Part shown: positions 1,524 to 42,412 of the stretch, piece by piece
Position numbering within the stretch: the stretch's first letter is position 1
How the letters are laid out: each line of letters starts with the position of its first letter
IMG/VR virus record: IMGVR_UViG_3300036760_000522
Coordinates: 1-64,000 of that record
Reading direction: 5' to 3' (one strand)
DNA: 64,000 bases
Translations under genes and position numbers: made by a program
Notes under the pieces: generated by a model
What the model was told of the DNA's origin: nothing
Databases searched by the model: none
What the model saw: only the letters and a program-made list of their open reading frames with translations

Positions 1524-1735
1524 CTTGGGGCGACCTCAAGGAAAAATTCGACACGCTACCACTGTCGACGAAGATCGTTGCCCAAGTCTGGATAGACGAC
1601 ATTGACGACGACAATTGGGACGGCTCGTTTGACGGGGCTTTCTACGACGAAACTGAGGAGACGCTCTACTTGGTGAAGCACGAAGAAGAGGCCGACGTGG
1701 TCGACGAACCAAACACTACCGGTAGCCGAGTTTGA
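1520..1735 (+). CDS. hypothetical acidic protein
   Basis: ORF coupled to upstream gene; stop lies inside the repeated 30-bp motif. Confidence 0.55.
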   Translation: MTWGDLKEKFDTLPLSTKIVAQVWIDDIDDDNWDGSFDGAFYDETEETLYLVKHEEEADVVDEPNTTGSRV

Positions 1736-1756
1736 ATCCGTCAGATGTTGAGAGGT
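1727..1756 (+). repeat. dispersed 30-bp element, copy 1
   Basis: CGAGTTTGAATCCGTCAGATGTTGAGAGGT; 29/30 identical to 11346-11375; 25-nt core again at 11420-11444. Confidence 0.9.
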
Positions 1757-2706: not shown

Positions 2707-3333
2707 GTGAAAAAACTGCGATATTCGAAAGCCTGGGAAATACGTGTCAGCGGAAATCACGCTCTTTATACCCGGGCGGATTTTCAAGCGGAGCGTGTCA
2801 GTTACGATACCCCTACGCCACCGGCTATGGCCGGGATGCTTGAATCGATCCTGTGGCGTCCAGGTTTCAACTGGCGTGTCAGTGAGATTCTCGTCCTGAA
2901 CCCAATTCAGTGGACCAACCTCACTCGAAACGAGGTCAAAGAGATCACGTTTAGTAAGGGCTACGTCGATCTGGATCAGCAACACACACAACGACGATCC
3001 AGAATCCTCGTCAACGTTGATTGGATCGTGAAAGCCAAACTCGTAACAAGCACGGAAACACCTATACCAGAACTCCGAAAAATGGAGGCAATGGCCGAAC
3101 GGTATTTGGCTAACGGGAAATGCAACCACAGACCGTTCTTGGGTTGTAGAGAGTTTCCAGCAAAGGTCCGTCTAGTGAATGGGTCCGAGACTCTACCAAG
3201 TCCGGTCGACATCACGCGGCAGTTGGGCAGGATGCCACACAGCTACCGTTGGGTTCAGGACGTTCGAGCTGAGGTTTTCATGTTCGATGCCGAACTGAAT
3301 CGTGGTCGGCTCGTCGTTCCGGAGGTCGCATGA
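2707..3333 (+). CDS. cas5: type I-C Cas5 (Cas5c/Cas5d)
   Basis: ALYTR...ERVSYDTPTP.A..G.LESILWRP...VLNPI...RNEV and PFLGCREF signatures; GTG start at 2707 preferred (ORF track starts at TTG 2668). Confidence 0.92.
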   Translation: MKKLRYSKAWEIRVSGNHALYTRADFQAERVSYDTPTPPAMAGMLESILWRPGFNWRVSEILVLNPIQWTNLTRNEVKEITFSKGYVDLDQQHTQRRSRILVNVDWIVKAKLVTSTETPIPELRKMEAMAERYLANGKCNHRPFLGCREFPAKVRLVNGSETLPSPVDITRQLGRMPHSYRWVQDVRAEVFMFDAELNRGRLVVPEVA

Positions 3334-5024
3334 TCCTGGAAGCCCTTTGGGCCTACGCCCAAAAAGCACGTCTTGTTCCCAACGAGTACATGGCGCAAAC
3401 GGCGGGCCTCACTGTCGACCTAAACAAGCAAGGGGCCTTTCGAAGCGTCACCGCCAATAGGTTTTCAGTCGACGCCCCAACCCCCGTTCCTGCCAAACGG
3501 CCGGGTACGACACCTAAGCCATATCTGTTGGACCACGTTGGTTACGTGCTTGGATTGGGGACCGATCCGAACAAGCTAGCCCGGCGCAAAACACAACAGC
3601 GAGCCTACAAGGCATACGTTACTGACCTAGCAGAAACCGTCAAAAGTCTGCGACCGGTTGCCAAATTCTTGTCGGGACCTGTACCCAAGGAAATCAAGCA
3701 GCTGAAATGTGCGGATCACATCAAGGTGGCCTTCACCGTCAACGGCAAGTCGATCTACAAAGATTCAGGACTCAGAGCGCACTATCGCAGTCTGCGCAAG
3801 GAGACATCCCCTACGGAGACTTGTCGAATCACCGGCAAGCCTTGCACGCCAGGTTTTTTTCCACTCTTCAAAAACCTTCCAGGATCCAAAGGTTCAAACC
3901 TGATTACCTTCGAGGAGAAGGCGTGGCAATTTGACGGACGAGACTCTAGCAGGTGCTACCCGCTCTTGCGCGAGATTCGTGAGGGTGTTGCAGCTGCCTG
4001 GAACCATCTCACCGAACCAGCAGAAAAGGCGTTTTGGAATCGACGTTCAGCGTTCGTCCTTGAACGATCCAAAGGTACAGAAAAAGACGACAAGTCGAAG
4101 CCTTTGGCGATTTGGTGGACGTTAGCAGATGTTGATCTTAGTCCACTGCAACGCGTTGTGGAAGGACCTGTTTCCGGCAAGCCCTATCGGGAATTTATGG
4201 ATCAGGCTTTCCTCGATCTCTCAGCACTAGAGGTTGAGGGGGACCTATTTGTCTTGGTGGCACAATCGTACGACTCGTGTCCCGGACGTATTTCCGTTCT
4301 GGATTGGTTGGTCGTGCCCCTGAGAAAAGTCGCAAGCAACCTACGACAATTTCGAACTGAAACGGGCAATGCGACGCTGCGACGATTGTGTCGAAGCTCT
4401 CCGAGTTACCTAGTAAGTCAGGCCCTCTTGCGAGCCGCCTTGGTGGGAGAGGATTACCCGCCAGGTGTCATCCGAGAGCTGACTCGTCTAAACAACCAAC
4501 GTTGGCCGGATACTAACGGGCTAGCACCAGGACCTCTACTCACCGGCGTCACAGCCAAACTAATTGGAAAAGGAAATCACATGAACAACGGAAAAGATCT
4601 GGAAGAAGAAAGAGACAACCCATTCCACACGACGGACCCAAATTTTTGGGGCGGCTGTTTGGTAGCTCTGGGTAACCACCTACTGGCTGCTAATGGTGTT
4701 GGTGGGAACTTGGACGCACAACTTGACTCGATCAGCACTCAGCCAGGAAAATACTTTCCGAAGTTCGACGGCAAGGTCCGACGCGCGATCACACGACTCC
4801 GCAAGGCTCCGGTTGAGGAAAAACCCGAGATCCATACGGCCATCTCACACTACGACAGCTCGTACGTCAAGTTCGTACAGGACAGCAGCAAAGGCATCGT
4901 ACCACTGCGTTTGAGCGGCACAGAGTCTCTCGCTTTTCGACGTGGGTATGTCTTGCAGCAGCGAAGCCTAAGAGTCAACAAGGCCAAAACAGCGGAGAAA
5001 CCAGAGAAATTATCAGGGACATAA
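3330..5024 (+). CDS. cas8c: Cas8c (Csd1)-like large subunit, divergent
   Basis: MILEALWAY N-terminus, CRITG motif followed by LITF.E.AW, C-terminal AFRRGY..QQ; lies between cas5 and cas7. Confidence 0.8.
   Translation: MILEALWAYAQKARLVPNEYMAQTAGLTVDLNKQGAFRSVTANRFSVDAPTPVPAKRPGTTPKPYLLDHVGYVLGLGTDPNKLARRKTQQRAYKAYVTDLAETVKSLRPVAKFLSGPVPKEIKQLKCADHIKVAFTVNGKSIYKDSGLRAHYRSLRKETSPTETCRITGKPCTPGFFPLFKNLPGSKGSNLITFEEKAWQFDGRDSSRCYPLLREIREGVAAAWNHLTEPAEKAFWNRRSAFVLERSKGTEKDDKSKPLAIWWTLADVDLSPLQRVVEGPVSGKPYREFMDQAFLDLSALEVEGDLFVLVAQSYDSCPGRISVLDWLVVPLRKVASNLRQFRTETGNATLRRLCRSSPSYLVSQALLRAALVGEDYPPGVIRELTRLNNQRWPDTNGLAPGPLLTGVTAKLIGKGNHMNNGKDLEEERDNPFHTTDPNFWGGCLVALGNHLLAANGVGGNLDAQLDSISTQPGKYFPKFDGKVRRAITRLRKAPVEEKPEIHTAISHYDSSYVKFVQDSSKGIVPLRLSGTESLAFRRGYVLQQRSLRVNKAKTAEKPEKLSGT
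4581..5024 (+). CDS. cas11: putative Cas11 small subunit from an internal in-frame start in cas8c
   Basis: AAGGAAATCAC-ATG at codon 418 of cas8c; 147-aa product resembles the helical Cas8c C-terminal/Cas11c region. Confidence 0.6.
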   Translation: MNNGKDLEEERDNPFHTTDPNFWGGCLVALGNHLLAANGVGGNLDAQLDSISTQPGKYFPKFDGKVRRAITRLRKAPVEEKPEIHTAISHYDSSYVKFVQDSSKGIVPLRLSGTESLAFRRGYVLQQRSLRVNKAKTAEKPEKLSGT

Positions 5025-5069
5025 ATCGTCCTTGTCGGTAAAACAAAACCAACACGAATGGAAAATCAA

Positions 5070-5945
5070 ATGGCGACAGCTAAGAAAACAACACAGGTAC
5101 CCGCATTGGACGGGATCATCGTTCCAGAAACCGTCAACGCAAATCAAAACGGGGATCCAGATGACGGGGGCAATCCTCGTCGCAACGCCGTGACAGACAA
5201 AGGGCTCTGGTCACGTGAAAGCATCAATCGACGGATCCGGGATTACGTCTACGACGTTCACAAAGGTAAACCCGGGTTCGATTTGTTCATCAAACGAGGC
5301 AATGTCCACGAGACACTGATCCGGGAAGCGTACGTGAGTTCCGGAGCAGGAATCGACAAGGGCAGAGACTACGCTAAGGGCAACCTTGCGTTGTGTGAAA
5401 AGTATTTCGACGTGCGGTGGTTCGGACTTGTAGTCACCAAACCTGGTGACGGTGGGATCCGAGGGCCAATTTGCATAAATATTGGTGAATCTGTCTACCC
5501 TATAACGCACGAAGACATGGCGGGTACGAGACAAACTCGGACGAACGAAGAACGTGCCAAAACTGGCAGTCGGGAAATGTCCCACAAGCGGTTCATTCCG
5601 CACGCGGTTTTCACGATTACCTGGCACCTCGATCCGTTTTACGCACAACGAACCGGGTTCGACAAGAACGACTTGGAAATCTTCCTAGACGCGATTACAC
5701 GTGTCTTCAGGAACGATCACTCGTCTATGAGGGGGCGAATCAACCTCCGGTACTCGGTCGTGTTTGAGCACGAGGAGCCTACCCGCAATGCCGAGCCGTG
5801 TGATTTGTTCGAGCTCCTCAAAATCAAGGCAAAGGATCCGCATACGGCTTCGCAATGGTCGGACTACACCGTGACCTTACCGACGGCCAAAGATCTGCCC
5901 GCCGGTGTAACGATGAAAATCCTGCACGCAACGAAGGCTGCTTGA
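5070..5945 (+). CDS. cas7: type I-C Cas7 (Csd2)
   Basis: NANQNGDPDDGGNPR, R.IRDY, YFDVRWFG, GIRGPI.I motifs; alternative start at 5058. Confidence 0.92.
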   Translation: MATAKKTTQVPALDGIIVPETVNANQNGDPDDGGNPRRNAVTDKGLWSRESINRRIRDYVYDVHKGKPGFDLFIKRGNVHETLIREAYVSSGAGIDKGRDYAKGNLALCEKYFDVRWFGLVVTKPGDGGIRGPICINIGESVYPITHEDMAGTRQTRTNEERAKTGSREMSHKRFIPHAVFTITWHLDPFYAQRTGFDKNDLEIFLDAITRVFRNDHSSMRGRINLRYSVVFEHEEPTRNAEPCDLFELLKIKAKDPHTASQWSDYTVTLPTAKDLPAGVTMKILHATKAA

Positions 5946-5953
5946 ACCGCCCT

Positions 5954-5990
5954 TAGAGGACGAGTGCTGAACTTCAGCACTCGTCCTCTA
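5954..5990 (+). terminator. perfect 18-bp inverted repeat between cas7 and helicase (terminator/attenuator or mRNA-stabilising hairpin)
   Basis: TAGAGGACGAGTGCTGAA-C-TTCAGCACTCGTCCTCTA followed by TTTCTGATT. Confidence 0.6.
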
Positions 5991-6011
5991 TTTCTGATTG
6001 GAGTACGAATC

Positions 6012-8345
6012 ATGGAATTTCACGATTACCAAGCTGTTACCTTGGCCGACGCCTGTAACACAGATTGGAAATCTTACTACGTTTTGTGGGCAATGGCAGC
6101 CGGGAAAACGGCGTTTTGCCACGCTTACCTCAAGTGGGCTTTCGAGTGTGACGTCTATGACCACGCAGTAATCCTAACGCCCTACAAAACCACAAGGGAC
6201 GGATTCGTCACCCGTAAACTGGATGATGAGCGCCGCATCTTGTACGTCAGCGATCTGAAATACGACGTGAGAAAGGACCTGGTACGCCCGCTAGAATCGG
6301 ACTCAATCGCAGAGCTTCGTGAATACCTGCGCACACCAAAGCCTGGCTACGCTGTGGTAATTTGTGACGCCACAGCAAGAGCCTTCGTCCAAACGGGGGC
6401 TGACCAGAACGAACGCCTCATAGTAATTGGCGACGAGTGTCATGGCCATCAAGCCCCCGCGATGAGATCATGGGTAAACGCAATTCGAAGCCGCGGAGCA
6501 AAAACCATCAGTCTAACCGCAACACCCTATCGTCACGACAACGTCCCTGTATTGCCTCCACCAGGCACTAAGGGGGTTCGGTTGGGCCCAGTCCGCACGT
6601 ACACCGAGCAGGTACGGGACGGCCTGGCGCCCGACATCACGTTGAAGTGTATTCCTGTGGCCTGTGCAAACGCTATCAATGACGACGAACGCTTTCAGGA
6701 GATGGCTGCGGCAATCGTGGCTAATTGGTCACCAGATCGCAAAGCCATGGTTCAAATTACACCACGGGCTGCTGGTTGGAGCGGGCGCGAGGAGGACGAA
6801 CTGAACGAAGTCCAGAAAACTTTCTGCAACCAATTTCGATGTCGCATCATTGAAGCTCTCCAAAAGGCCAAGATCAGGTGCGTCGACATGACCGACTTTG
6901 AGGAGCACGACGGCTGTCCGCAGAACTATCAAGAGGTGTTACTCGCGGAACGTAAGGTCAGACATTTCAAGGACTCAAAGGTGGACGTCTTTATTGGGAT
7001 CAACAACATATCCCTAGGTGTTGATTGGACATTGTGTAACACAGTAATATCTACAGATTTTATGAGTTCCTTGTCTCGGATGGTTCAATTCAGTGGTCGA
7101 GGAGGTCGAAACAAAAAGGATTTCCTGTCATATCCGAATAGGTATCTAGACCAGATGGAGTTTTTGGTCTTGACACCTGTCAAGCGCGAAAACGAGGATG
7201 CTGTACGAATCCGGGAGATGGCTCGTCACGCCGTACTGCTGTCACTGACACTCTCTCAGTTGACACTTCCAGCAGGTTTGACAGGTTACACCGCCATCCA
7301 ACGGAGATTGCGTGAGATCCATGCCCCAAAGATTGCCACGGAGCTGCGAGACCACCTTGGAAGACGCGATCACTTGACTAAAGTCCACGCGAATACCGTC
7401 GTTGTCCTCTCTGATCAGTGGGGGCGAATCAAGGTAAAGAACCTCAGAGTATTACTCCTTCGACAACAACGGCAGCAGTATCCAGACGAGACCCCGGAGC
7501 AGAGACAACATGCTGTCGACGCGGCCATACAAGAGCTAGTGTCAGCTCAAGTGGATCCCGGACAGATCGAGAAAGCAGTAGCTTCTATCCCACTACAAGA
7601 AGGGACAACTCTCCGATACGTATTCGAGGAGTTGGTCAAGTGGTTCAACGACGAGTATATTGACGTTCGAATCAATCCGTTTCTCCGCAATGCAAGAGAA
7701 TTTGTTACTGAGTTCTACCCGGATACTTGCGACAATGTATTTCGCCGCCTCCGAGAGCTGCAACAAGAGGCTCTGGATCCGACAATCGTATGTGACTGGG
7801 CAATTGCCTTTTACAAAGAGCACGACAGATGGCCCGAGGCAGGCCCCATTCAGGAAGCACCGCACGTCTCCTGGGGGGATGTCAATCAAGCTCTCCTCCA
7901 CGGGACACGAGGGTTACCGCGGCTCCCCAACGGACTGTTGCAATTCCTCGGTGAATGGGCCCACAACCACAAACAGGTCCTCAGGGTGTTCTCGAGAGTC
8001 TTCCACGATATCCACCAGGACAACTCCACGGAGACGGAGTGGCGGCCTGTACTGAGCGCCCTAGGCATTCCAGGAACAGACAATATCCACGAAGCCTTTT
8101 TGCAATACGATCGTGCGCGATTGTCCTCCAGAGTCTACTTTGGTGAGCGGGAGCAAGCCGGATTCGAAGCAGCCATGTCCCACGTGGTGAAACACATTCA
8201 GCTGTTCCATTTCTTGCGGCTCTTCACGAAGGCTTTCTACAGTCGCCAGGGCTCGCATTGGAACTTCTGGTGGACAATTGCAGAAGCCCAGCGCCACGAC
8301 ACAGCTTTGACTATCAGACAACTCCGAAACCTTGCGAGCGGTTAG
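6012..8345 (+). CDS. Cas-associated SF2 (DExH) helicase lacking an HD nuclease domain
   Basis: Motif I AMAAGKT near residue 27, II DECH, III TAT, VI QFSGRGGR; no room for an N-terminal HD domain and no HD motif recognised; GGAG RBS before ATG 6012. Confidence 0.85.
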   Translation: MEFHDYQAVTLADACNTDWKSYYVLWAMAAGKTAFCHAYLKWAFECDVYDHAVILTPYKTTRDGFVTRKLDDERRILYVSDLKYDVRKDLVRPLESDSIAELREYLRTPKPGYAVVICDATARAFVQTGADQNERLIVIGDECHGHQAPAMRSWVNAIRSRGAKTISLTATPYRHDNVPVLPPPGTKGVRLGPVRTYTEQVRDGLAPDITLKCIPVACANAINDDERFQEMAAAIVANWSPDRKAMVQITPRAAGWSGREEDELNEVQKTFCNQFRCRIIEALQKAKIRCVDMTDFEEHDGCPQNYQEVLLAERKVRHFKDSKVDVFIGINNISLGVDWTLCNTVISTDFMSSLSRMVQFSGRGGRNKKDFLSYPNRYLDQMEFLVLTPVKRENEDAVRIREMARHAVLLSLTLSQLTLPAGLTGYTAIQRRLREIHAPKIATELRDHLGRRDHLTKVHANTVVVLSDQWGRIKVKNLRVLLLRQQRQQYPDETPEQRQHAVDAAIQELVSAQVDPGQIEKAVASIPLQEGTTLRYVFEELVKWFNDEYIDVRINPFLRNAREFVTEFYPDTCDNVFRRLRELQQEALDPTIVCDWAIAFYKEHDRWPEAGPIQEAPHVSWGDVNQALLHGTRGLPRLPNGLLQFLGEWAHNHKQVLRVFSRVFHDIHQDNSTETEWRPVLSALGIPGTDNIHEAFLQYDRARLSSRVYFGEREQAGFEAAMSHVVKHIQLFHFLRLFTKAFYSRQGSHWNFWWTIAEAQRHDTALTIRQLRNLASG

Positions 8346-8524
8346 GTGCTGCGACTAGGTCCTTAACCGCTCGCAAGGCGGCTTTGTTCTTTGAAAACTC
8401 ACGACATTTTCACTTCCGTTCACCTGTAGATGGTGAACGGAAGGACGCCATTCTGTTCTCTGCAAGACAACCTCTCGCAATCCACACTGCAAAACCTCGA
8501 TAAAACAGTCTTTAGTGACGAAGG
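8346..8524 (+). promoter_or_regulatory. CRISPR leader
   Basis: Non-coding, relatively AT-rich segment between helicase stop and the first conserved repeat. Confidence 0.65.
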
Positions 8525-9283
8525 GTCGAGACAGGGACCAAGGTCCCTGATGATTTCAACGACATCACCAGCGGCATGCTGCTCGCTGCCCCGGAGTCGA
8601 GACAGGGACCAAGGTCCCTGATGATTTCAACCAACGGACCGATCAAGACCTCTGGTAACGCCATCAGGTCGAGACAGGGACCAAGGTCCCTGATGATTTC
8701 AACGACCATGTTCGGAGAGGACGATGACGCTGTTCGCGGTCGAGACAGGGACCAAGGTCCCTGATGATTTCAACAACCCAGCCGGCGACGGTGGCGGCCC
8801 CGCCATGAACTGGTCGAGACAGGGACCAAGGTCCCTGATGATTTCAACACAATAACGCGGAGCAGATGAATGTCACAATTAGTTGGTCGAGACAGGGACC
8901 AAGGTCCCTGATGATTTCAACTCTGAGTTGAGTCCGCATATGTAGTCACCTACTTCGTGTCGAGACAGGGACCAAAGTCCCTGATGATTTCAACATGGAG
9001 GTCCTATGTTCGTTGATAACAATTGCACCGGGTCGAGACAGGGACCAAGGTCCCTGATGATTTCAACTCAGCGTGGCGACCAAGGAACGGACCTTACAGG
9101 TTGTCGAGACAGGGACCAAGGTCCCTGATGATTTCAACACTGGACGACCCCGCCGGCGCGCGACTCCACCATCAGTCGAGACAGGGACCAAGGTCCCTGA
9201 TGATTTCAACATGCCTGATCGCGTGCACGACTCCTCAGTAGGGGGATGTCGAGACAGGGACCAAGGTCCCTGATGATTTCAAC
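8525..9283 (+). CRISPR. CRISPR array, conserved block: 11 repeats GTCGAGACAGGGACCAAGGTCCCTGATGATTTCAAC (36 nt), spacers 35-38 nt
   Basis: Repeats start at 8525, 8596, 8668, 8739, 8813, 8886, 8959 (one substitution), 9032, 9103, 9175, 9248; stem CAGGGACC/GGTCCCTG followed by 11-nt ATGATTTCAAC. Confidence 0.98.
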
Positions 9284-9346
9284 GCGGCGAGCCGGCCCGG
9301 CGTCACGCGCCACAAGATCGATCAAAAACAGAGGCCTAAGCCTCTG

Positions 9347-9409
9347 ATGATTTCAATATTGGAGCCCTAACCCACGCGATATACGAGATTCCATTGTCCA
9401 GCAAGCAGG
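9347..9409 (+). ncRNA. candidate cas-regulating crRNA 1 (handle + spacer after first variant repeat)
   Basis: Spacer nt 1-11 (9358-9368, ATTGGAGCCCT) identical to 2696-2706 next to a TTC PAM. Confidence 0.65.
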
Positions 9410-10088
9410 GATGTGACAGGAGCCTTGGCTCCTGATGATTTCAACCCAGAGGCCCCTGGCGGTTTGGATGGACCCGAACTGACATGTGACAGGAGCCTTG
9501 GCTCCTGGTGATTCCAACAAGACAGGTGCTTAGGCACCTGATGATTTCAACGGAGTGCGCGTCGTTGCACAGCAGACCGAGGTGCTCGGATCGAAACAGG
9601 GACTCAGTCCCTGATGATTTCAACTTGTCCACCGGTGCATCCCAATGCACCGGTGCCGGAGCTTCAGCTCCTGTTTTTGACTCGTCAAGAACAGCGTTGA
9701 AGCACCTGATGGTTTCAATTCTTGTACCGATCCTGGCTTCACTAGAACGACAGCAGGACGTGACAGGAGCCTTGGCTCCTGGTGATTCCAACATGAGCGC
9801 CGCCTCGATGCGATCCTCAACGCCTTCAAAACGACAGGAGCTTCAAGGCTCCTGATGATTTCAACACACTGCACAGCGAGTCCTCGACAGCATTGGCATC
9901 GCCTCAAGACAGGGGCTACAAGACTCCTGATGATTTCAACACTCAACAACAGGTGGCAGAACGAGGCCTCTCGTATACAGGTGCTTAGGCACCTGATGAT
10001 TTCAACCAAAGCGCCCGGTCCATCGGGATGCACTGCGCCTTCAACTGGAACGGTGATTGTGTATGAAGCAAGAGCAAAAAAGCCCCTG

Positions 10089-10134
10089 GGGATTTCAATA
10101 TTGGTGCCCTATCGTGTTTGGTATGAAAAGTCTA
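10089..10134 (+). ncRNA. candidate cas-regulating crRNA 2
   Basis: Spacer from 10100 (ATTGGTGCCCTAT) matches 2696-2708 except at positions 6 and 12. Confidence 0.55.
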
Positions 10135-10985
10135 GTCAGTAACAGGGGTTCAACCCCTGATGATTTCAACTCGTATCGATGGTATGTCGAACTTGAGCGG
10201 GCAAAATCAGGAGCTTAAGCTCCTGATGATTTCAACAAAGGCAAAGTCGATCGAGAGACTACTGTGCCAAAATCAGGGGATCAATCCCCTGATGATTTCA
10301 ACATCGACAAGCAGGGATTCACCGGAGCGTTGCTGGTTGTCGGTCCAGGGGCTAGGTCCCCTGATGATTTCAACGCGCAGACCATCGACGGCGTAATCGA
10401 AGAGCTCTCGGTCAGAGACAGGAGCTTCGGCTCCTTGGTGATTACAACAAATGCACACCGGCCGGTCTTGTCGGCGCCCCGTCAGTAGCAGGGGTTCAAC
10501 TCCCCTGATGATTTCAACCAGCCCGAAGCTCTAGAGGACGAACTCGCGGCGATGACAGGAAACAGGGACCTTGGTCCCTGATGATTTTAACGTTGAGAAA
10601 CCAGGGCTGTTCCTTCAGCTTGGCCTGTCGAAACAGGGACTCAGGTCCCTGATGATTTCAACATCAAAAGCTCAAAGGCTTGACGGACTTCGTGGGGATC
10701 GAAACAGGGACTCAGGTCCCTGATGATTTCAACCTCTACGGGATATCGGCCATCCGAGATCGCCAAAAAACAGGAGCTGAAGCTCCTGATGATTTCAACT
10801 ACCAATCGTGTTCGTCGAGAGCCCCCAAGATCGAAGACAGTCAGGGGCTTAGGCTCCTGATGATTTCAATAGCACAGTGGACGGGCGCGACGCTGTTGGT
10901 GTACTATCTGGTCATCGGTATCTTGTCGAGATATTGTGCCTTTCGGCTGTGGCCAGATAGCTGACTTGGAGGAGGCCCCACGAAA

Positions 10986-11354
10986 ATGAACGAAGAAATC
11001 GATGCGATGTACTTACAGCACTGCCCTCATTGTGCGGGGGTGCATGTCGAACCCGTCCAACTTCCTGAGCCGCAAACGGCACGAAGACTTGCGTGCGGGA
11101 ATTGTCACTTCACGGCGGAAGAGGAACAATTTCGGGAGTACCAAAAGGCACGAATAAGGGAGTCCGAGCTACTGGCGCATTGCCGGGAGCAGTACGAGAC
11201 GTTGGTTCTTTTCGACAGAGTCGTCGATGTTGAGCCCTTACCTGCTGAGTGGTGTGAGGTGATCGACACATACCATCGCAAATGTGTCGCAGCTCGAGAG
11301 GAAGCTTTCTTCAGTAGCTTCGACAGTGCGATGTCGGTCCAGAATCGAGTTTGA
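10986..11354 (+). CDS. zinc-ribbon hypothetical protein
   Basis: CPHC...CGNC; GGAGG upstream; stop inside the repeated element. Confidence 0.65.
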   Translation: MNEEIDAMYLQHCPHCAGVHVEPVQLPEPQTARRLACGNCHFTAEEEQFREYQKARIRESELLAHCREQYETLVLFDRVVDVEPLPAEWCEVIDTYHRKCVAAREEAFFSSFDSAMSVQNRV

Positions 11355-11375
11355 ACCCGTCAGATGTTGAGAGGT
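11346..11375 (+). repeat. dispersed 30-bp element, copy 2
   Basis: 29/30 identical to 1727-1756. Confidence 0.9.
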
Positions 11376-11419: not shown

Positions 11420-11450
11420 GTTTGAACCCGTCAGATGTTGAGAGAATAAT
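11420..11450 (+). promoter_or_regulatory. dispersed element copy 3; sigma70-like promoter upstream of RHH gene
   Basis: TTGAAC-17 nt-AATAAT (11422-11450). Confidence 0.55.
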
Positions 11451-12980: not shown

Positions 12981-13067
12981 TTCATCAACCGCTAAGGATA
13001 ATCAAGCGGTTCTGGACCCACTCGAATTAGCGGCGGTGTTTGCGGAGCAGGCTTTGAAAGGTATTCA

Positions 13068-13514
13068 ATGGAACAAATGACAACTGACGACATCAGAACC
13101 AAGGTCGTGGCTTCACTCGAGCTAATCGGGATCAAGTACAGCAAGGTCACGGTTTTGGATCTAGGCCTCCAGTGGGTCGTGGATTGTTTTGAGCAATTGA
13201 GCATACACCTCGAACACGACACACACTTGATTCAAGGAGTTATGATCCAAGCACCAAGAACGTTGCTGCTTCTTGGCGCCAACGGCTACTGGTATGTATT
13301 CGTGGAACGACATTCTCCTGAGGAAGCCCAACCTCATGAGACCTTTGCTGACGGATTTTACTGCGTCTCCGACAGTGAGGAAGGCGGGACACCTGATTGC
13401 CTCATGAGCGGTATTGTGGAAGTCGTGCGTGAGTTGGCCGAGCGTCGTCTTCCAACCACAGGAACGGACGGGCTGCGAACAGGACAGGGGAACGTGCCTG
13501 TGTTCAAGAGATAG
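13068..13514 (+). CDS. hypothetical protein
   Basis: 148-aa ORF at head of a coupled gene run. Confidence 0.6.
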   Translation: MEQMTTDDIRTKVVASLELIGIKYSKVTVLDLGLQWVVDCFEQLSIHLEHDTHLIQGVMIQAPRTLLLLGANGYWYVFVERHSPEEAQPHETFADGFYCVSDSEEGGTPDCLMSGIVEVVRELAERRLPTTGTDGLRTGQGNVPVFKR

Positions 13515-13712
13515 GTGACACACTTGTTCCTAGAGTTCTTGGAACGACACAGCATACCTGTAGTGGGCCTGCTGTGTATTGCCTTCCTCATCTGGATCAC
13601 CAGCGAGATAGGTGAAACCAAATCACAGATCGATACTGCTGTGAAAGACCTCGACGAAATCCGCGCACACGTGTTACGTATCAACGAGTGTTGTAAGGAG
13701 TGTGCTCAATGA
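13515..13712 (+). CDS. small membrane protein
   Basis: one hydrophobic helix then a coiled segment. Confidence 0.5.
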   Translation: MTHLFLEFLERHSIPVVGLLCIAFLIWITSEIGETKSQIDTAVKDLDEIRAHVLRINECCKECAQ

Positions 13713-13876
13713 GCTCACCTGATCTTGAAAGGCGTATGGATGAGGTCATCGCACGACATCGTGCTGAGCATCGAGAGGCGCGAGAGAGATCCCTTGCCGT
13801 GTACGAAGCGTGTTACCTTGCTGCGATGAAAGACGTCATGGAGCGTGCCGCGAAGGAGTCGTTACAAGATGAGTGA
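13709..13876 (+). CDS. small protein, paralog of 14055-14264
   Basis: MSSPDLERRMDEVIARHRAEHREARERS...; ATGA overlap with upstream gene; below the ORF-track size cutoff. Confidence 0.65.
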   Translation: MSSPDLERRMDEVIARHRAEHREARERSLAVYEACYLAAMKDVMERAAKESLQDE

Positions 13877-14054
13877 AGGAACAACAACACTCTTGGCTTG
13901 GGCTGTCTTACGCGAGTACAGCGTTGGCATCTGTGTGATTCTCCTCACCCCTGGGAATCGGTGCTTGGTTGGTCAGTGGTAGCCCGGATCAAACTCCACA
14001 GACTCTCAAGGCGCAGCAAGCACAGATCGAGGAACTCAAGATGGAGCTAAGCCG

Positions 14055-23367: not shown

Positions 23368-24447
23368 GTGCGCTGGCAGCAATCTGGGTCCGCTTTCTAC
23401 CGGCCCTTGCTTGACACCGCGGTGCAGCACAATCTCACGTCCACGGGCAGCACCTGCATCGTGTATCGACCCACTGGTTAGATTGAACTTGCGACCAGTG
23501 TGTCGGTCGGGGTTGCGCTTTTCGTAGTAGTCCCGAACGGCTTTTTCCCCTACCCAAACGAGTCCTTCTTGCTGACAAACCTTTTTCTCGTCGTCGAGCT
23601 TGTCGAGAAAGCCTGACATCACGCCGGCTCGGAACTCACGCCTAAAGCGATTAGATCGCAGGCCCTCACCCTGCCTGTACTTGAACCACAACCGGTTCGC
23701 AGTGCGGTTGAGAAAAGTGTGCACGTAGGAGGCTAGCTCCAAGTTGTCGTCTAATCCACAGACCTCGAGAACGCGTCCTTGCTTACCTTCCGCAATGCGC
23801 CAGATGTAGATCCAGATACAGGCAACGAAGAAATGTCGTGACAAGATACAGCTGAGCAACTTGTCCGCTTCCGTGGTCCGTAAGCTTGGTTTGCCGAGAT
23901 GTCGAAAGCCGTAATGACTCGTCGTGACATCCAACACGTTTTCGATATTGTACTTCAGCATTAGCCGTTGCGCCGTTTTCATGGCTATCTCGGCCTCGTG
24001 TTGGTTGGCGCTCTTCGCTAGTGCTAAAAGACCGGCTATCTTTTGCAGGACAGCTGGACGCTCACCATTGCTCTTGGCTTGAGGCAATCCAGATGCTCGT
24101 CCGTCAAAGCCTCGCTCTTGACAGACCTTTTGGAACAAGTCTCCGTGAGGTAGCGCGTCGTCGGCTTTGAGGACTTCGTGAACGTACTGGTGCGCCATCT
24201 CGTGCTTCAAGACTTCGATGACAGCCCCCCACTCGGACGTGAACAAGAACCCGCGTGTGATTTCGACACACCGCGCACTCGGAACCCACCGACCCAAGGT
24301 CTTGGCGGCGTCGGTTAGTTGGAAAGCGCAGGCCTTCAACTGATTTGCGAAGAAATTGTGGTTGATCGATCGGTACTCGCGATACAAGGCGCGAACCGCG
24401 GCACTCTCTAGTTCGTTGGAGAGCTTCGCGTGTCCGGGGTTCAACAT
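23356..24447 (-). CDS. SprT-like metalloprotease + DUF2786 domain protein
   Basis: HEMAH zinc motif; KIAGLLALAKSANQHEAEIA...AQRLMLKYNI (DUF2786-like). Confidence 0.75.
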   Translation of the reverse strand: MLNPGHAKLSNELESAAVRALYREYRSINHNFFANQLKACAFQLTDAAKTLGRWVPSARCVEITRGFLFTSEWGAVIEVLKHEMAHQYVHEVLKADDALPHGDLFQKVCQERGFDGRASGLPQAKSNGERPAVLQKIAGLLALAKSANQHEAEIAMKTAQRLMLKYNIENVLDVTTSHYGFRHLGKPSLRTTEADKLLSCILSRHFFVACIWIYIWRIAEGKQGRVLEVCGLDDNLELASYVHTFLNRTANRLWFKYRQGEGLRSNRFRREFRAGVMSGFLDKLDDEKKVCQQEGLVWVGEKAVRDYYEKRNPDRHTGRKFNLTSGSIHDAGAARGREIVLHRGVKQGPVESGPRLLPAHSGD

Positions 24448-24540
24448 GATGTCCGTGGCTATTGCCGATTCCGGAAAGTTCGGCGCTTTGGTGGAAAGTG
24501 GAAACTAGTGTATAGAAGGCAAGCGGAGGAATCAAACGCG

Positions 24541-25752
24541 ATGTTGGAATGGTTGGTGTCGTTAACGGCGAATCCGGTATTTGGTGGTTTTCTTGGAGGG
24601 GCAGTTGTCGCTGGTGGCCTCTGGCTCCTACGCAACATTCCAGGTCAAGCAGCTAACTTCATACTTTGGCGGTTTGGAGCTTCGTTGATGGTCTTTAGCG
24701 AGGACGCGGCTTTCGAGCGTATGAACGAGTGGCTCAGCTCTCTTGAATACACCAAGAGGTGCCGCCGGCTGCGGCTCACGACAACCTACGACGAGGATAC
24801 CAGAACGGAGCAAGAAGTTGTAGCCCCAGGTATCGGCTCACATCTGTTTTGGTATCGAAACAGACCGATTCTCGTGAAGCGTTCCATCCCTGACAAGGGC
24901 GGACTCGGCAGCTGGAAGCGGTTCGAGGACATTGAAATCAAATCGTTTGGCTCGCCGAACCTGCTGAGGGATCTTGTACAAGACGTGAAGCTCGCGCGTC
25001 AGGAGCGGAACTCGAGAACCATCAACGTGTACCTTTATCGACACCGTTGGAGGCTGGCTGCGCGGAAACCGAAACGGGAACTCGACACAGTAATCTTGGA
25101 GGAGACAACCAAGAAATTGATTGTCTCGGATGCCGAATGGTTCATTGCGTCGCGGCGTCGTTATGACGAACTCGGACTGCCTTACCGTCGTGGTTACCTC
25201 TTTGAGGGCCCGCCAGGATGCGGTAAAACAACTCTTGCCATGGCGCTAGCCAGCCATTTGACGCGTCCGATTTACGCGCTCAATCTTGGCAGTGTCGTCA
25301 ACGACGACATGTTGATCGACGCTGTTTGCGAAGTGCCAGAGCATGCCATTCTCTTACTTGAAGACATCGACGCGACAGAAGCCAGCGTCATGCGACGGCC
25401 CGCAGAGGAGACCAAGGCACCTGTGCAACAACCGCCACCCGGAGCAATGTTTGTAGCTCGTCTGCGGAAACAGATAGAGGACAGCAAGGCTATCGCCGTT
25501 GTTTTAGCGTTCGAGTCCTGGCTTAGAAGCGCACCAATAGGCACACCACGAAGCGCTATACCGGATGATTTGTCTACAGATCCGTTGCGTGAGGAGGGAC
25601 TATTCGTCACTGTCGAAACGCCCAACAAATGTGAAGGCAGATTTGCCAAGATCCGACGTGACGAAAGTGGGAAACCCAGTCTCGACGAATGGGAGTATTT
25701 CACAGGAACCCACGGACGCTTCGTACGGCTACTCCCGCCCATTTGGCAGTGA
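24541..25752 (+). CDS. BCS1-like AAA ATPase, apparently truncated and fused to an unrelated C-terminal domain
   Basis: N-terminal TM segment, BCS1_N-like region, RRGYLFEGPPGCGKT, ILLLEDID; sequence leaves the AAA pattern after Walker B. Confidence 0.7.
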   Translation: MLEWLVSLTANPVFGGFLGGAVVAGGLWLLRNIPGQAANFILWRFGASLMVFSEDAAFERMNEWLSSLEYTKRCRRLRLTTTYDEDTRTEQEVVAPGIGSHLFWYRNRPILVKRSIPDKGGLGSWKRFEDIEIKSFGSPNLLRDLVQDVKLARQERNSRTINVYLYRHRWRLAARKPKRELDTVILEETTKKLIVSDAEWFIASRRRYDELGLPYRRGYLFEGPPGCGKTTLAMALASHLTRPIYALNLGSVVNDDMLIDAVCEVPEHAILLLEDIDATEASVMRRPAEETKAPVQQPPPGAMFVARLRKQIEDSKAIAVVLAFESWLRSAPIGTPRSAIPDDLSTDPLREEGLFVTVETPNKCEGRFAKIRRDESGKPSLDEWEYFTGTHGRFVRLLPPIWQ

Positions 25753-29707: not shown

Positions 29708-32700
29708 GTGGCACGGTTAAATTCAACAGCAATAGCGGGGTATTACCCGACTCCGGAACATCTAATTCCGAGGATTGCGAAACACCTTCGTGTGATTGAG
29801 TCCGATCAATGGTCGGGGGCGTGCGCTAGGTGGATGGATCCGTGCGCAGGTGATGGGGCTCTGATTTGTGATCTCGTTACTCGAGTGATGGATCAACCGG
29901 GCAAGGCAGGGCTCTACCTTTGTGAGCTTGAGAAGGAACGCGCTGAACGTTGCAAGGCCAAAGTCTATGAACTGTTCGGCTGGAAAGCTCAACAACAAGT
30001 TTTGCACGGGGACGCCTTTCACACGACTTTTGATGACGGTGACTGTGAAATCCTCTATCTGAATCCGCCGTATGATTTCGATCCGAAACACGTCCGTTTG
30101 GAGCAGAAGTTCCTTTCACGCTTCACGCAAGCGTTGCGACTCGACGGCGTGCTCGTCTTTGTTGTCCCGCATTATGCGCTTTCGGCTAGCGCTGAGCTTC
30201 TGGCCAAGGAGTACAAGGATCTCGTTTGTCTGAGATTTCCCGATCCTGACTACGCCACCTTCAAACAAGTTGTTGTGTTCGCCAGACGGTCGCGTCGTTT
30301 CGAACCGGATCCTGTGGTCGTTGCTCGCGTTCAAGCGTGGGCAGACTCAGTGGAGGGACTGCCCATTCTGGGGGAGACGTCGGCAGTCTACGAAGTCAAA
30401 GGGACGATGTACACAACAACGTGGAAGGTCCAAGAGTTGGATCTGCACGCTCTTGTCGCTAAGGCCCGCCCGTGGCACCAGACGACCCGTGAAGGGCTTC
30501 TTCCAGTTCCCCACACTCTGCCAACGACTCCCCCAGAGTCGCTCCTCTGGAGGCGTTACACGCTGGCTACTCCCCCTAGACCGGCGCACATCGCGAGCGG
30601 CCTCGCTACGGGTCTTTTCAACGGGCTTCGGATCAAGCCCGACACTGACACATCCGGGCTACCCGACCTCTTGGTCAAGGGGACTTTCGAACGAGAGTTC
30701 GTGCCTGTCGAGGATCGGCTTGACGCGGACGGCGTAATCATCGGCGCCGTGGAAGTTGAACGACCTCGGTTAAGTGTGACCTGCCTCAACCTGACAACGG
30801 GCACCTACCAGGAGTTGGGGACGCCTGGGAACCCTACGCTTGGTGACCTCTTGGCGAACTATCGCCAAAGCCTCATGGCTCAGATGCGACACCAATGCCC
30901 AGTCTTGTACGACCCGCAGGATCCCCCTGTTGTCACACTCAAGCCTGTCAGGCGGAAGCTGTACAAAGCTCAGGAGCACTCAGCCAAAGCGATCTTGAAA
31001 TTGCTTGAGCAACGCGAGACGAACCGATCAGCTATTTTGCTTGGCGAAATCGGCAGCGGCAAGTGTCTAGGTTTGGGCACCCTCGTGCTCAAATATGATG
31101 GGACACGCACACCTGTGGAGAGTATTCGTAAGGGGGATTTGTTGATGGGGCCCGACAGCAAGCCTCGCAAGGTTTTGAATACGACTAAAGGGACGGGTTC
31201 TCTTTACAAAGTTGTACCTGTTACTGGGGATTCTTGGATCTGCAATGACGCGCACATTCTGACTCTCGTACACACGATGAGTGATGAGATTTTTGACATA
31301 CCGTTAGCGCGTTATCGCAGTGGCCGCAGACTCAATTTGCGCTTGCGAAATGGACAGACTTCGCGAAGAACTACACATCCTGTTGAAGAGTTCAAGCAGT
31401 TCTTCCCGGAAAACGGAGTTGATTTTCCGGCTCAGGTAGTCACACCATTAGTTGATCCTTACTTTTTAGGTGTGTGGTATGGCGACGGGACTAAATTTAG
31501 TCTAAACGGGGTCAGTCGTTCTGTCGAAGTCACAACGGCGGACCAGGAGATCTTGTCGCTGTTGTCTACGATAGCCTCACAGTACAACTTGAAAGTCAGA
31601 GCCCGTAAAAATTCCAATCCCGACAATAAGGCGACCACTTACGCGCTCACTGTTGGGAACAGAGTCACAAAGAAGCCGTGGGCACACACGAGGGGTAACA
31701 GACCTAATCAACTTCTGCGACAGTTACAGGTATTGTACAAGGACGGGTTCCATCTGCCGCAAGAATATTTGACAGGCAGCCGTGAAGTGCGGAGAGCGTT
31801 TCTTGCGGGGCTGTTGGACTCAGACGGGTATCGGAACGGCCCTGGCGTTTTCGATTTCATTCAAAAGAAGCGAGAGTGGTCCGAAGACGTTTGCTTCTTA
31901 GCTCGTTCTCTAGGTATCAGGGCCACACTACGGAAGACAAGAAAATCCGCTTACCGTGGCGTTGCGGGTGACGTGTACTGGCGGGTCACCATGAGTGGGG
32001 ACTTTTCTGATTTGCCTTTACGTATTCCTCGTAAGCAAGGGCCAATGAGAGCTGCGGTGCGAAAGAATCGAGCCGGGGAGCCGAGTTACCGTCGCACGAA
32101 ACATGTAAGCCGCACGGGCATTCGTATTGGATCGATTGGCCTGGGTGAGTACGCAGGCTTCGAATTGAGTGGTGATGGACGGTTTTTACTAGGGGACTTC
32201 ACAGTCACACACAATACGAGCACGGTTTTAGCTGTCGCAAAAACGATCGCCAAAACTGTGTTCGTCATGTGTCCTCCGCACTTGCTCGACACGTGGAAGA
32301 ACGAGATCAAAGCGAACGTGCCGGAAGCACGTGTGCGTGTTTTGAAGACGATCGACAGTGTGAACCGTTTCGCTGAGGTCGTTGTTGAAAAGCCTCAGCT
32401 CACGATTGCGATCGTGTCGCGTGAGAGTGCCAAACTTGGCCACGGTTGGGAAGGTGTGGGCTCTGCATGTCCCAAGTGTGGCGCTGCAACGCCTGATACA
32501 GATTTAGCTCGGAAGCGCGCTCATTGCGAAGCTGTCGAAGTTCGTGCAGAGGACAGTCTCGCAAAGATGGCTGTTTCACTGGCTGCAACATTGTCTCGAT
32601 ACGCACCTAACCACTCAACGGTTCGAGCCTTGTTGAAGGGGCGTCATTGGTCACGGATTTTGACACATCGTGTAGCCAAAGCGAGTCCGCCTGCTTGGAG

Positions 32701-42064: not shown

Positions 42065-42412
42065 ATGGAGCTGCTGCTGCGACGGTCTGTCGGTACTGAG
42101 GTTGCGTACGAGGTTGACGAGAACTGTCACTTGGACTTGGTAGGCGTTTTCGGAAACCGTTATGTCCCGCACGTACAGTGTGTCGTGTTAGGAGACGTCT
42201 CAATTGAAGACGACTTGGAGATTTTCAGAGCTGCCCCCAAACGACTTGCGGCCCTGGTTGAGTTGTTGACCGGCTTGCCGGTTCTTGAGTTCGATGGCGT
42301 CACGATTCGGGGACCTGATAATTTCGGTATTCGCCTAGACCGTGAGGCGTTTGCGAGAGGAAGAAGCACGCCTCCTCAAAGCGTAAGACAGACGTCAACG
42401 GTAGAGAATTGA
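42065..42412 (+). CDS. hypothetical protein
   Basis: ORF. Confidence 0.5.
   Translation: MELLLRRSVGTEVAYEVDENCHLDLVGVFGNRYVPHVQCVVLGDVSIEDDLEIFRAAPKRLAALVELLTGLPVLEFDGVTIRGPDNFGIRLDREAFARGRSTPPQSVRQTSTVEN

What the first reader, a model, noticed from the sequence alone, without database searches (positions are those of the whole stretch)
2707..10870. Phage type I-C-derived CRISPR system in which Cas3 is replaced by a nuclease-less SF2 helicase
Seen: cas5c-cas8c(cas11)-cas7-helicase-array, with no cas1/2/4/6 and no HD nuclease. The helicase begins at motif I within about 27 residues and carries about 400 aa of unrelated C-terminal sequence. Known: canonical I-C needs Cas3 HD for DNA degradation, and Cas5c processes crRNA leaving an 11-nt handle, which matches the repeat geometry here. 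Inference: an RNA-guided DNA-binding/unwinding machine for transcriptional silencing or blocking of competitor elements or host genes, with spacers acquired via host Cas1-Cas2. I recall similar compact helicase-associated type I systems from huge-phage surveys but cannot verify relatedness here.
Basis: partly seen in the sequence, partly recalled or inferred. Interest (0 to 1): 0.85.

Follow-up and report, generated by a model that had tools for sequence, protein, structure and literature searches.

The report
Phage CRISPR with helicase replacing Cas3
A 300-kb phage carries a cut-down type I-C CRISPR system whose DNA-shredding enzyme Cas3 is replaced by a motor protein with no detectable nuclease; this rare variant was noted in 2020 but never studied, and its repeats turn out to be unusually varied.

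Summary
The locus reads cas5c (2707-3333), cas8c with a probable internal cas11 (3330-5024), cas7c (5058-5945), a 777-aa SF2 helicase (6012-8345) and 33 repeat units (8525-10870). It lies at the start of a 301.5-kb viral contig.

- **Helicase:** it has intact ATPase motifs and matches no Cas3 or HD model. Canonical Cas3 proteins used as positive controls match those models strongly. Its core resembles HsdR, type ISP and XPB-like double-strand DNA translocases. Its C-terminal 360 aa have no conserved catalytic-type residue and no fold match, but that part of the model is poor.
- **Conservation:** the same cas5-cas8-cas11-cas7-helicase module recurs in at least three other diverged contigs. The four Cas7 proteins form their own clade.
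- **Prior report:** Al-Shayeb et al. 2020 already described "a type I-C variant... helicase instead of Cas3", so this is a new member of a known, uncharacterised kind.
- **New here:** the arrays of this family have non-identical repeats. Stems vary through compensatory changes while the 11-nt handle is kept. In the window, 11 identical leader-proximal repeats precede 22 diverged ones.

Nuclease-free interference is the best-supported mechanism, but it is an inference. No targets were found, and 237 kb of the genome could not be read.

The parts
2707..3333 (+). cas5c (Cas5d-type, 208 aa; probable pre-crRNA endonuclease; there is no cas6)
   Evidence: TIGR01876 5.6e-32, above cutoff. PADLOC Cas5c 1.9e-40. 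Best PDB relative is the Cas5 of a type I-C Cascade, 8g9s, 1.2e-29. GTG start with GGAG upstream. The same 208-aa call is made in the near-identical contig.
3330..5024 (+). cas8c (Csd1-like large subunit, 564 aa), divergent
   Evidence: PF09709 9.4e-20 and PADLOC Cas8c 2.9e-23, both over residues 1-385 only. Below the NCBIfam equivalog cutoff, 50.9 against 218 bits.
4582..5024 (+). Probable internal cas11 reading frame (147 aa) inside cas8c
   Evidence: In-frame ATG at 4582 preceded by AAGGAAA. Relatives carry a separate 158-187-aa ORF at this position. Colinear but weak similarity to the L004 small ORF, E 0.003; no significant similarity to the L009 one. Inferred, not shown.
5058..5945 (+). 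cas7c (Csd2-like backbone subunit, 295 aa)
   Evidence: PF05107 5.4e-56. TIGR02589 5.1e-49, 167 bits against a cutoff of 182. Groups with the Cas7 of the three other helicase-linked loci, SH-aLRT 100.
5954..5990 (+). Perfect 17-bp hairpin with a U-rich tail between cas7c and the helicase gene (attenuator or RNA-stability element?)
   Evidence: -31.4 kcal/mol, z = -9.1. Function is inferred.
6012..8345 (+). CRISPR-linked SF2 helicase/translocase (777 aa). ATPase core at residues 1-416, then a helical C-terminal region with one confident ~60-aa module at residues ~590-650
   Evidence: Helicase_C 8e-7 and weak ResIII; no Cas3 or HD hit. Profile against PDB: HsdR 1.6e-13, XPB 4e-12. Foldseek: type ISP, HsdR, Chd1, XPB. 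Conserved next to cas7 in L004, L007 and L009. Walker A, DExH and motif VI residues are invariant.
8330..8395 (+). Strong stem-loop with a T-rich tail after the helicase gene (terminator-like), followed by the leader up to 8524
   Evidence: -34.3 kcal/mol, z = -5.0.
8525..9283 (+). CRISPR block A: 11 identical 36-nt repeats (one has a loop SNP) with 10 unique 35-38-nt spacers
   Evidence: No spacer-to-spacer similarity was found.
9322..9624 (+). CRISPR block B: 5 diverged repeat units (units 12-16); units 14 and 15 abut with only 4 nt between them
9630..9680 (+). Two hairpins and a U-run inside the array (terminator-like), splitting it into two transcription units?
   Evidence: -29 kcal/mol, z = -5.1.
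9684..10870 (+). CRISPR block C: 17 diverged repeat units (units 17-33). Stems differ by compensatory changes, the handle ATGATTTCAAC is kept, and the period is 66-95 nt
   Evidence: (93.5% of cells paired, 4 of 7 pairs with double changes, 0 of 500 shuffles as high).

Best explanation
This is a phage-encoded, type I-C-derived interference module that has no adaptation genes. In it, the Cas3 nuclease-helicase is replaced by an unrelated SF2 motor of the ResIII/XPB/HsdR kind.

Shown:
- The genes are intact.
- The helicase has all its ATPase motifs.
- It is not a Cas3 and has no recognisable nuclease.
- It stays next to cas7 in diverged relatives.
- The repeats keep a 7-bp hairpin followed by an 11-nt tail.

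Inferred mechanism:
1. Cas5c cuts the array transcript at the 3' base of each hairpin. This gives crRNAs with an 11-nt 5' handle.
2. Cas5c, Cas8c, Cas11 and Cas7 assemble on the crRNA and form an R-loop on double-stranded DNA beside an unknown PAM.
3. The R-loop-locked complex recruits the helicase.
4. The helicase uses ATP to translocate or unwind outward from the target. This blocks or clears transcription and replication machinery without cutting DNA.

The outcome would be silencing of a competitor element or host locus, much as DinG acts in type IV-A systems.

The arrays are maintained without their own Cas1-Cas2, so repeats drift under selection only for hairpin shape and handle. The 11 identical leader-proximal repeats with unique spacers suggest occasional acquisition in trans, or import by recombination.
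For: - Cas identities.
- Helicase motifs invariant across 12 relatives.
- The helicase gives no cas3_core or cas3_HD hit at E<=0.1. Cas3 of four canonical I-C loci hit these models at 1e-22 to 1e-40, yet score only 7-19 bits against the variant-helicase profile. Family members score 730-790 bits on that profile.
- Nearest solved relatives are double-strand DNA translocases: HsdR, type ISP, XPB, Chd1, RadD. Nearest viral models are phage SSL2/XPB-like helicases.
- Synteny cas5-cas8-cas11-cas7-helicase holds in L004/L005/L006 and L009, and cas7-helicase in L007 and L008. Identity is only 25-62%.
- The four Cas7 proteins form one clade, SH-aLRT 100.
- Outside the helicase motifs, the only invariant residues are P, G, W, R and L. 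No PDB sequence or fold match exists for the C-terminal part.
- No other cas gene among the families shown for 69 further window ORFs, nor in the flanks of relatives.
- Hairpin covariation.
- Published precedent.
Against: - No experiment exists for any member.
- The C-terminal 360 aa are modelled poorly (pLDDT mostly below 50), so a novel nuclease fold cannot be excluded.
- Only 64 of 301.5 kb were readable, so a cas3, cas12 or other nuclease could act in trans. Al-Shayeb 2020 reports a second CasPhi system in their two phages.
- No protospacer was found, so DNA targeting, PAM and target class are unverified.
- The loci belong to related phages (shared methyltransferase, RNase HII and other genes). 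Part of the synteny therefore reflects common descent.
- Foldseek ranking among SF2 motors is a weak discriminator of translocation mode.
Confidence: 0.55

Rival explanations
1. Degradative interference after all. The helicase supplies only the motor, and a nuclease supplies the cut. That nuclease could be an unrecognised domain in the helicase C-terminus. It could also be a phage- or host-encoded enzyme recruited in trans, such as a Cas3 or HD protein elsewhere in the 301-kb genome, host Cas3 or RecBCD.
For: The C-terminal region has no assignable fold and a low-confidence model. 237 kb of the contig were not readable. One distant homologue of the C-terminal repeat module (P0012) carries an HD-domain hit. 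HNH-bearing DinG variants show that helicase partners can gain nucleases (PMC10910872).
Against: No nuclease family hit in Pfam, NCBIfam or PADLOC. No invariant D, E, H or K outside the helicase motifs in the family alignments. No nuclease gene is conserved beside the module in relatives. No cas3 appears among the families shown for the window, and no Cas or nuclease family is recorded for the genes called in the ~4 kb upstream of it in the near-identical contig.
Confidence: 0.25
2. The helicase is a general phage replication or repair helicase that happens to sit beside the cas genes. Cascade alone acts as a DNA-binding repressor, or as a decoy against host type I-C immunity.
For: The nearest viral structures are ordinary phage SSL2-like helicases. 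Some homologues, such as P0030, are not cas-linked. Cas3-less type I-C remnants proposed to be DNA binders have been reported. Viral cas genes acting as anti-CRISPRs have been proposed (preprint 10.1101/2023.06.24.545427, listed; only its abstract was seen).
Against: The gene stays immediately downstream of cas7 at 25-62% identity while the flanking genes differ. In L093 it directly follows an array. Long multi-spacer arrays with selected hairpins argue for guide production, not a decoy role.
Confidence: 0.1
3. A decaying relic. A type I-C locus that lost cas3 and cas1/2/4 and is drifting, with the diverged repeats as a symptom.
For: The repeats are heterogeneous and some handles are degenerate (units 14, 17, 18, 22, 27). 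Cas8c and Cas7c fall below the NCBIfam equivalog cutoffs.
Against: All four ORFs are intact in at least four lineages. Helicase motifs are invariant. Stems change by compensatory substitutions with 93.5% pairing. Of 106 units across five arrays, 101 keep a hairpin. Eleven identical repeats with unique spacers indicate recent array growth.
Confidence: 0.05

Closest known systems
Type I-C variant of huge phages (Al-Shayeb et al. 2020, Nature 578:425, PMC7162821, text and Extended Data Fig. 9)
   Same: Cas5d-like Cas5 with no Cas6. No Cas1 or Cas2. An 'unidentified helicase' in place of Cas3. Carried on a phage genome larger than 200 kb.
   Different: The paper gives only gene content and a helicase tree. 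I could not establish whether this contig is one of their two phages. No CasPhi was found in the 64 kb read.
Canonical type I-C CRISPR-Cas (Cas3-Cas5c-Cas8c/Cas11c-Cas7c-Cas4-Cas1-Cas2)
   Same: Homologous Cas5c, Cas8c and Cas7c. Hairpin-plus-11-nt repeat geometry. Spacers of about 35-38 nt. cas11 coding capacity at the 3' end of cas8c.
   Different: No Cas3 and no adaptation genes. The helicase lies downstream of cas7, where cas4-cas1-cas2 normally sit. The handle ends ATTTCAAC, whereas the canonical arrays whose anchor word fell in the handle carry GGATTGAA-type handles. Repeats are non-identical, whereas most of the 39 canonical I-C arrays examined keep 30-40 conserved columns. Cas7 sits on a separate long branch.
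Type IV-A CRISPR-Cas (Csf complex plus CasDinG)
   Same: Mobile-element-borne. Lacks adaptation genes. A non-nuclease helicase replaces the nuclease. Interference there works by nuclease-independent repression, and spacers can be acquired in trans (abstracts of PMC11519345 and bioRxiv 10.1101/2023.06.23.546257, as listed).
   Different: The effector proteins are unrelated (Csf rather than Cas5c/8c/7c), and crRNA is processed by Cas6/Csf5. DinG is an XPD-like 5'-3' helicase, whereas the helicase here is ResIII/XPB/HsdR-like. The similarity is in working principle, not membership.
HsdR and type ISP restriction motors; XPB/SSL2 helicases
   Same: Best sequence-profile and fold matches to the ATPase core.
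   Different: No PD-(D/E)xK nuclease domain as in HsdR or type ISP enzymes. No methyltransferase or TFIIH partners. The C-terminal region is unique. TM-scores are only about 0.3.

Membership tests
Type I-C CRISPR-Cas (canonical) | Cas5c (Cas5d) present, with no Cas6 | tested here: met
   TIGR01876 111.5 bits against a cutoff of 85. No Cas6 among the PADLOC families shown for the window.
Type I-C CRISPR-Cas (canonical) | Cas8c/Csd1 large subunit and Cas7c/Csd2 backbone | tested here: met
   PF09709 71 bits (cutoff 27) and PF05107 190 bits (cutoff 33). Both fall below the stricter NCBIfam equivalog cutoffs, so they are divergent.
Type I-C CRISPR-Cas (canonical) | Cas3 with an HD nuclease and a Cas3-type helicase | tested here: not met
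   No cas3_core or cas3_HD hit for the helicase. No Cas3 model among the PADLOC and Pfam families shown for the other 69 window ORFs. Positive controls hit at 1e-22 to 1e-40. The remaining 237 kb of the genome were not read.
Type I-C CRISPR-Cas (canonical) | Adaptation module cas4-cas1-cas2 | tested here: not met
   Absent from the families shown for the window and from the 10-kb flanks of relatives.
Type I-C CRISPR-Cas (canonical) | Repeat with a stem-loop followed by an 11-nt segment that becomes the crRNA 5' handle | tested here: met
   7-bp stem, 4-nt loop and 11-nt tail, supported by folding and covariation. Actual cleavage cannot be tested here.
Type I-C CRISPR-Cas (canonical) | Cas11c made from within cas8c | tested here: inconclusive
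   Internal ATG at 4582 with a Shine-Dalgarno-like sequence. Relatives have a separate ORF. Similarity to the L004 ORF is weak, E 0.003, and to the L009 ORF not significant.
Cas3 helicase family (for the 777-aa protein) | Match to the Cas3' core helicase and an HD (Cas3'') domain | tested here: not met
   no hit; real Cas3 proteins score 7-19 bits on the family profile; no Cas3 among the top solved-structure matches.
SF2 helicase/translocase (ResIII / XPB / HsdR-like) | Motifs I, II (DExH), III and VI, and two RecA-like lobes | tested here: met
   Invariant G31, K32, D141, E142, Q359, G362, R363 and R366. Helicase_C above the Pfam cutoff. Ten of 12 relatives hit ResIII. Fold matches. The direction and substrate of translocation cannot be tested here.
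Type IV-A CRISPR-Cas | Csf1/2/3/5 effector and a DinG helicase | tested here: not met
   PADLOC returned only type I-C Cas models for the effector genes, and PbeA at weak E-values for the helicase.
Huge-phage type I-C variant (Al-Shayeb 2020) | Cas5d-like Cas5 without Cas6, no Cas1/Cas2, a non-Cas3 helicase, on a phage genome over 200 kb | tested here: met
   (IMG/VR contig of 301,550 bp). Phage genes in the window.
Huge-phage type I-C variant (Al-Shayeb 2020) | Co-resident CasPhi (Cas12j) system | not tested
   No Cas12 among the families shown for the 64-kb window.

The most novel reading that the evidence does not exclude
This small phage lineage may represent a distinct, nuclease-free type I subtype with three properties.

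1. A double-strand DNA translocase of the XPB/HsdR kind is recruited to the Cascade R-loop. It silences or evicts machinery from competitor or host DNA rather than cutting it.
2. Arrays are naturally 'non-repetitive'. Cas5c needs only a hairpin shape and an 11-nt handle, so every repeat can differ. That would protect long arrays from recombinational collapse in a genome with no Cas1-Cas2.
3. New guides enter by recombination, or by trans-acting integrases.

If so, this would be a compact programmable repressor with built-in design rules for stable multiplex arrays.
Probability: 0.3. Interest if true: 0.75.

Novelty: new member of a known kind. Interest (0 to 1): 0.55.

Why it matters
Type I systems are defined by Cas3. 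A natural Cascade that has swapped Cas3 for an unrelated motor parallels type IV-A/DinG, and it arose independently. It would show how RNA-guided complexes are re-wired for non-destructive control during phage-host or phage-phage conflict.

The variant has stood uncharacterised since it was noted in 2020. This analysis contributes:
- a defined gene set with start sites;
- a family of about six to seven diverged members for comparison;
- evidence that the motor resembles double-strand translocases rather than Cas3;
- the observation that the family's arrays tolerate, or favour, non-identical repeats.

The last point gives a directly testable rule for Cas5c substrate recognition. It may also help in building recombination-stable multiplex guide arrays.

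Tried and rejected
- **Protospacer searches all failed.** All 33 window spacers were run against the masked window. The whole array was run against 50,697 phage records. 101 spacers from five family arrays were run against all fetched loci and gave only chance 15-19-nt hits. Seed patterns from three leader-proximal spacers, run against IMG/VR, hit only the array itself, including within the complete 301-kb contig.
The Cas7 alignment in metagenomes returned mostly canonical I-C loci, which served as controls.
- **A second 'mini-array' at 11349/11420 was rejected.** The 25-nt element also occurs at 1730 upstream of an unrelated gene, so it is more likely a phage promoter or regulatory motif.
- **The RecA/KaiC-like ATPase at 1762-2409 is not part of the system.** It is not conserved beside the module in relatives.
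- **Rfam:** no family matched in the window.
- **The C-terminal half of the helicase remains unassigned.** Pfam at E<=1, a PDB profile search, AlphaFold2 and Foldseek gave no assignment.
- **Cas5c catalytic residues were not resolved.** Residues conserved in 53 canonical Cas5c are mostly kept, but no clear catalytic His or Tyr column exists even among the canonical sequences.
- **The supplementary files of Al-Shayeb 2020** did not let me identify their two phages.
- **The DNA of the near-identical contig from SRR11714420** was unavailable, so arrays could not be compared.


Full report
**Where the window comes from**

The window is bases 1-64000 of a 301,550-bp metagenomic contig, JGI 3300036760, Ga0373620_0000024. 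The same contig is listed in IMG/VR as a viral genome. The window encodes several phage-type functions:
- a tail-fibre-like protein;
- a protein with a peptidoglycan-binding domain, as in endolysins;
- intein-bearing enzymes;
- DNA methyltransferases;
- a Tad2-like anti-defence domain.

A phage of more than 300 kb is therefore the right frame.

**The observation**

- Cas5c: 2707-3333, GTG start with GGAG upstream.
- Cas8c: 3330-5024.
- Cas7c: 5058-5945.

All three are recognised by Pfam, NCBIfam and PADLOC as the type I-C proteins. The closest solved Cas5 is that of a type I-C Cascade.

Cas8c matches its family only over the first ~385 residues. The last ~150 residues begin at an in-frame ATG (4582) preceded by AAGGAAA. 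They align colinearly but weakly (E 0.003) with a separate small ORF that occupies this position in L004; the corresponding L009 ORF shows no significant similarity. I read this stretch as cas11, fused here and free-standing in relatives. That is an inference.

The fourth gene (6012-8345, 777 aa) has the following features:
- a Q-motif-like HDYQ;
- Walker A at residues 29-33;
- DECH at 141-144;
- TAT at 170-172;
- QxxGRxxR at 359-366.

The same 777-aa start and the 208-aa Cas5 start are called in a near-identical contig from another sample. No read-through of a stop codon was needed for any of these genes.

**Is the helicase a Cas3, and does it hide a nuclease?**

Pfam, NCBIfam and PADLOC give only Helicase_C, weak ResIII and weak HsdR or PbeA hits. 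No Cas3 core, HD or other nuclease model matches.

As a positive control I took the 720-830-aa ORFs upstream of cas5 in canonical I-C loci, which had been fetched with a Cas7 alignment. Four of them hit cas3_core at 1e-29 to 1e-40 and cas3_HD at 1e-22 to 1e-28. One of the four is from a viral contig. The same proteins score only 7-19 bits on a profile of the variant helicases. Family members score 730-790 bits on that profile.

A 12-sequence profile searched against PDB sequences finds HsdR (1.6e-13), archaeal XPB (4e-12), Rad25, RadD and RIG-I-like helicases. Cas3 is not among the best 60.

An AlphaFold2 model has mean pLDDT 62.5, with the core at 60-90. It matches the type ISP enzyme LlaBIII, HsdR of EcoR124I, Chd1, XPB in TFIIH, CSB and LGP2, again with no Cas3 in the top 50. 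In the viral structure library the best matches are phage 'SSL2' superfamily II helicases.

The C-terminal 360 residues are predicted as all-helical, apart from one short beta-hairpin in the module at residues ~590-650, which is the only part modelled with confidence. For this region:
- Pfam gives no hit at E<=1;
- there is no PDB sequence hit;
- there is no fold hit;
- the only invariant residues across the family are P, G, W, R and L.

So 'nuclease-less' is supported as far as sequence and fold can show. The poor model of the C-terminal region leaves room for an unrecognised fold.

**Is the helicase part of the system?**

An exhaustive HMMER search of 1.84 billion representative proteins found few full-length relatives. 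Their contexts are as follows.
- L004/L005/L006 (a 182-kb viral contig, also in IMG/VR): cas5c, cas8c (400 aa), a small ORF, cas7, then the helicase.
- L009: the same five genes in the same order.
- L007 and the fragment L008: cas7 followed by the helicase.
- L093: an array directly followed by the helicase.
- A more distant homologue, P0030: not cas-linked.

Identities to the window proteins are 25-62%. Flanking genes are not shared. Other genes elsewhere in the contigs are shared, so these are related phages. Among the 80 best Cas7c loci from metagenomes, only the L004 contig carries this helicase.

In a tree of 77 Cas7 proteins, the four helicase-linked ones form one group with SH-aLRT 100. 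They are separated from 73 canonical proteins by a long branch (the long-branch caveat applies).

The module is therefore rare, old, and kept intact.

**The arrays**

The handle CTGATGATTTCAAC is confined to 8547-10870. There are 33 units.

- **Units 1-11.** These are identical 36-nt repeats with unique 35-38-nt spacers.
- **Units 12-33.** These keep only a 29-nt core: a 7-bp stem, a 4-nt loop and the 11-nt tail ATGATTTCAAC. The stem sequence differs from unit to unit.

On an alignment of the 24 distinct units:
- 93.5% of cells pair;
- 4 of the 7 pairs show changes on both sides;
- no shuffle out of 500 reaches the observed covariation;
- sliding the pairing partner drops pairing to 28-50%.

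Single units fold as predicted.

The same pattern holds across the family. Of 106 units in five arrays, 101 keep a hairpin of at least 5 bp directly 5' of the handle, and there are 79 distinct stem regions.

As a control, most of the 39 distinct arrays detected in canonical I-C loci keep 30-40 alignment columns at 90% identity or more; five short or doubtful ones keep only 9-17. The diverged arrays of this family keep 9-17 columns. The exceptions are the L004 upstream array, which keeps 26, and the window's uniform block, which keeps 30.

Where the anchor word of a canonical array fell in the handle, it reads GGATTGAA-like. In this family the handle ends ATTTCAAC.

A double hairpin with a U-run lies inside the window array at 9630-9680. 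A strong terminator-like stem follows the helicase gene. A perfect 17-bp hairpin separates cas7 from the helicase.

**Reading of the arrays (inference)**

Without its own Cas1-Cas2, nothing re-copies the leader-proximal repeat. Repeats therefore drift under selection only for what Cas5c and Cascade need.

Some variant units recur: units 14 and 18, units 15 and 21, units 30 and 31, and the sequence following units 12 and 22. This suggests segmental exchange.

The block of 11 identical repeats with unrelated spacers is the usual footprint of integrase-mediated acquisition. It therefore points to one of two things: acquisition in trans, or import of a block from an adaptation-proficient array.

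**Targets**

None were found. I searched the masked window, the phage records, all fetched loci, and IMG/VR with three seed patterns. The IMG/VR scans also show that those three spacers have no second site anywhere in the 301-kb genome.

**Mechanism**

The best-supported reading is RNA-guided binding by a I-C-type Cascade, followed by recruitment of an ATP-driven motor that acts without cutting. In principle this parallels type IV-A/DinG.

The main rival is that a nuclease acts with the motor, either a cryptic one or one supplied in trans. I cannot exclude this, for two reasons. The C-terminal fold is unresolved, and 237 kb of the genome were out of reach.

**Prior knowledge**

Al-Shayeb et al. 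[quoted passage not shown] They show the locus and a helicase tree in Extended Data Fig. 9.

Full-text searches found no later functional study. Altae-Tran et al. 2023 mention a different Cas3-less I-C remnant with a Cas8-Cas5 fusion.

The finding is therefore a new member of a described but uncharacterised variant.
- the family census;
- the Cas3-negative controls;
- the translocase-like affinity of the motor;
- the split versus fused cas11;
- the non-identical-repeat arrays.

Noticed in passing
window 1730-1754, 11349-11373, 11420-11444: A 25-nt element (GTTTGAAYCCGTCAGATGTTGAGAG) occurs three times on the + strand in intergenic positions; chance expectation is 0. One copy overlaps a sigma-70-like match. 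It is probably a phage promoter or regulatory motif. The first copy lies upstream of the genes that precede the cas operon.
   Followed up: partly
helicase residues ~587-650 (window ~7770-7960): A ~50-60-aa module (W..P...G...W...L..G.RGL) is the only confidently modelled part of the C-terminus. Most of the 150 proteins listed in the exhaustive search (726 hits at E<=0.001) match the query only through it, some with up to 14 matched stretches. No Pfam model matches it.
   Followed up: partly
window 9483-9551: Two repeat units (14 and 15) abut with only 4 nt between them. Unit 14, and its near-copy unit 18 at 9757-9792, carry a degenerate handle (GTGATTCCAAC).
   Followed up: no
window 29708-34519 and 60101-62737: Two large ORFs carry inteins. 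One is 1603 aa, with a DUF6094 methyltransferase-like N-terminus, a helicase-like C-terminus and a Hint/LAGLIDADG insert. The other is 878 aa, with Hint, AP2 and LAGLIDADG hits.
   Followed up: no
window 42529-42680: A perfect 75-nt tandem duplication (2.0 copies) lies inside the 525-aa ORF on the - strand (42395-43972). That ORF has no family match.
   Followed up: no
window, ORFs not localised (batch scans): Other counter-defence or metabolism genes are present: a Tad2-like (Thoeris anti-defence) domain, a patatin-like phospholipase, RNase HII, a response-regulator receiver, two thymidylate kinases and a 2'-5' RNA ligase-like protein. A BCS1-type AAA ATPase lies at 24430-25752.
   Followed up: no
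L012 (IMGVR_UViG_3300029116_000176), 4452-6692 and 13045-14037: This unrelated viral contig carries a canonical type I-C locus, with a complete Cas3 (HD plus helicase) and a uniform 16-unit array. It contrasts with the Cas3-less variant.
   Followed up: partly
L004 4552-6349 and 12613-13193: The 182-kb relative has arrays on both sides of the module. They use two different handle variants: GAGGATTTCAAC upstream and GAGGATTCCAAC downstream.
   Followed up: partly
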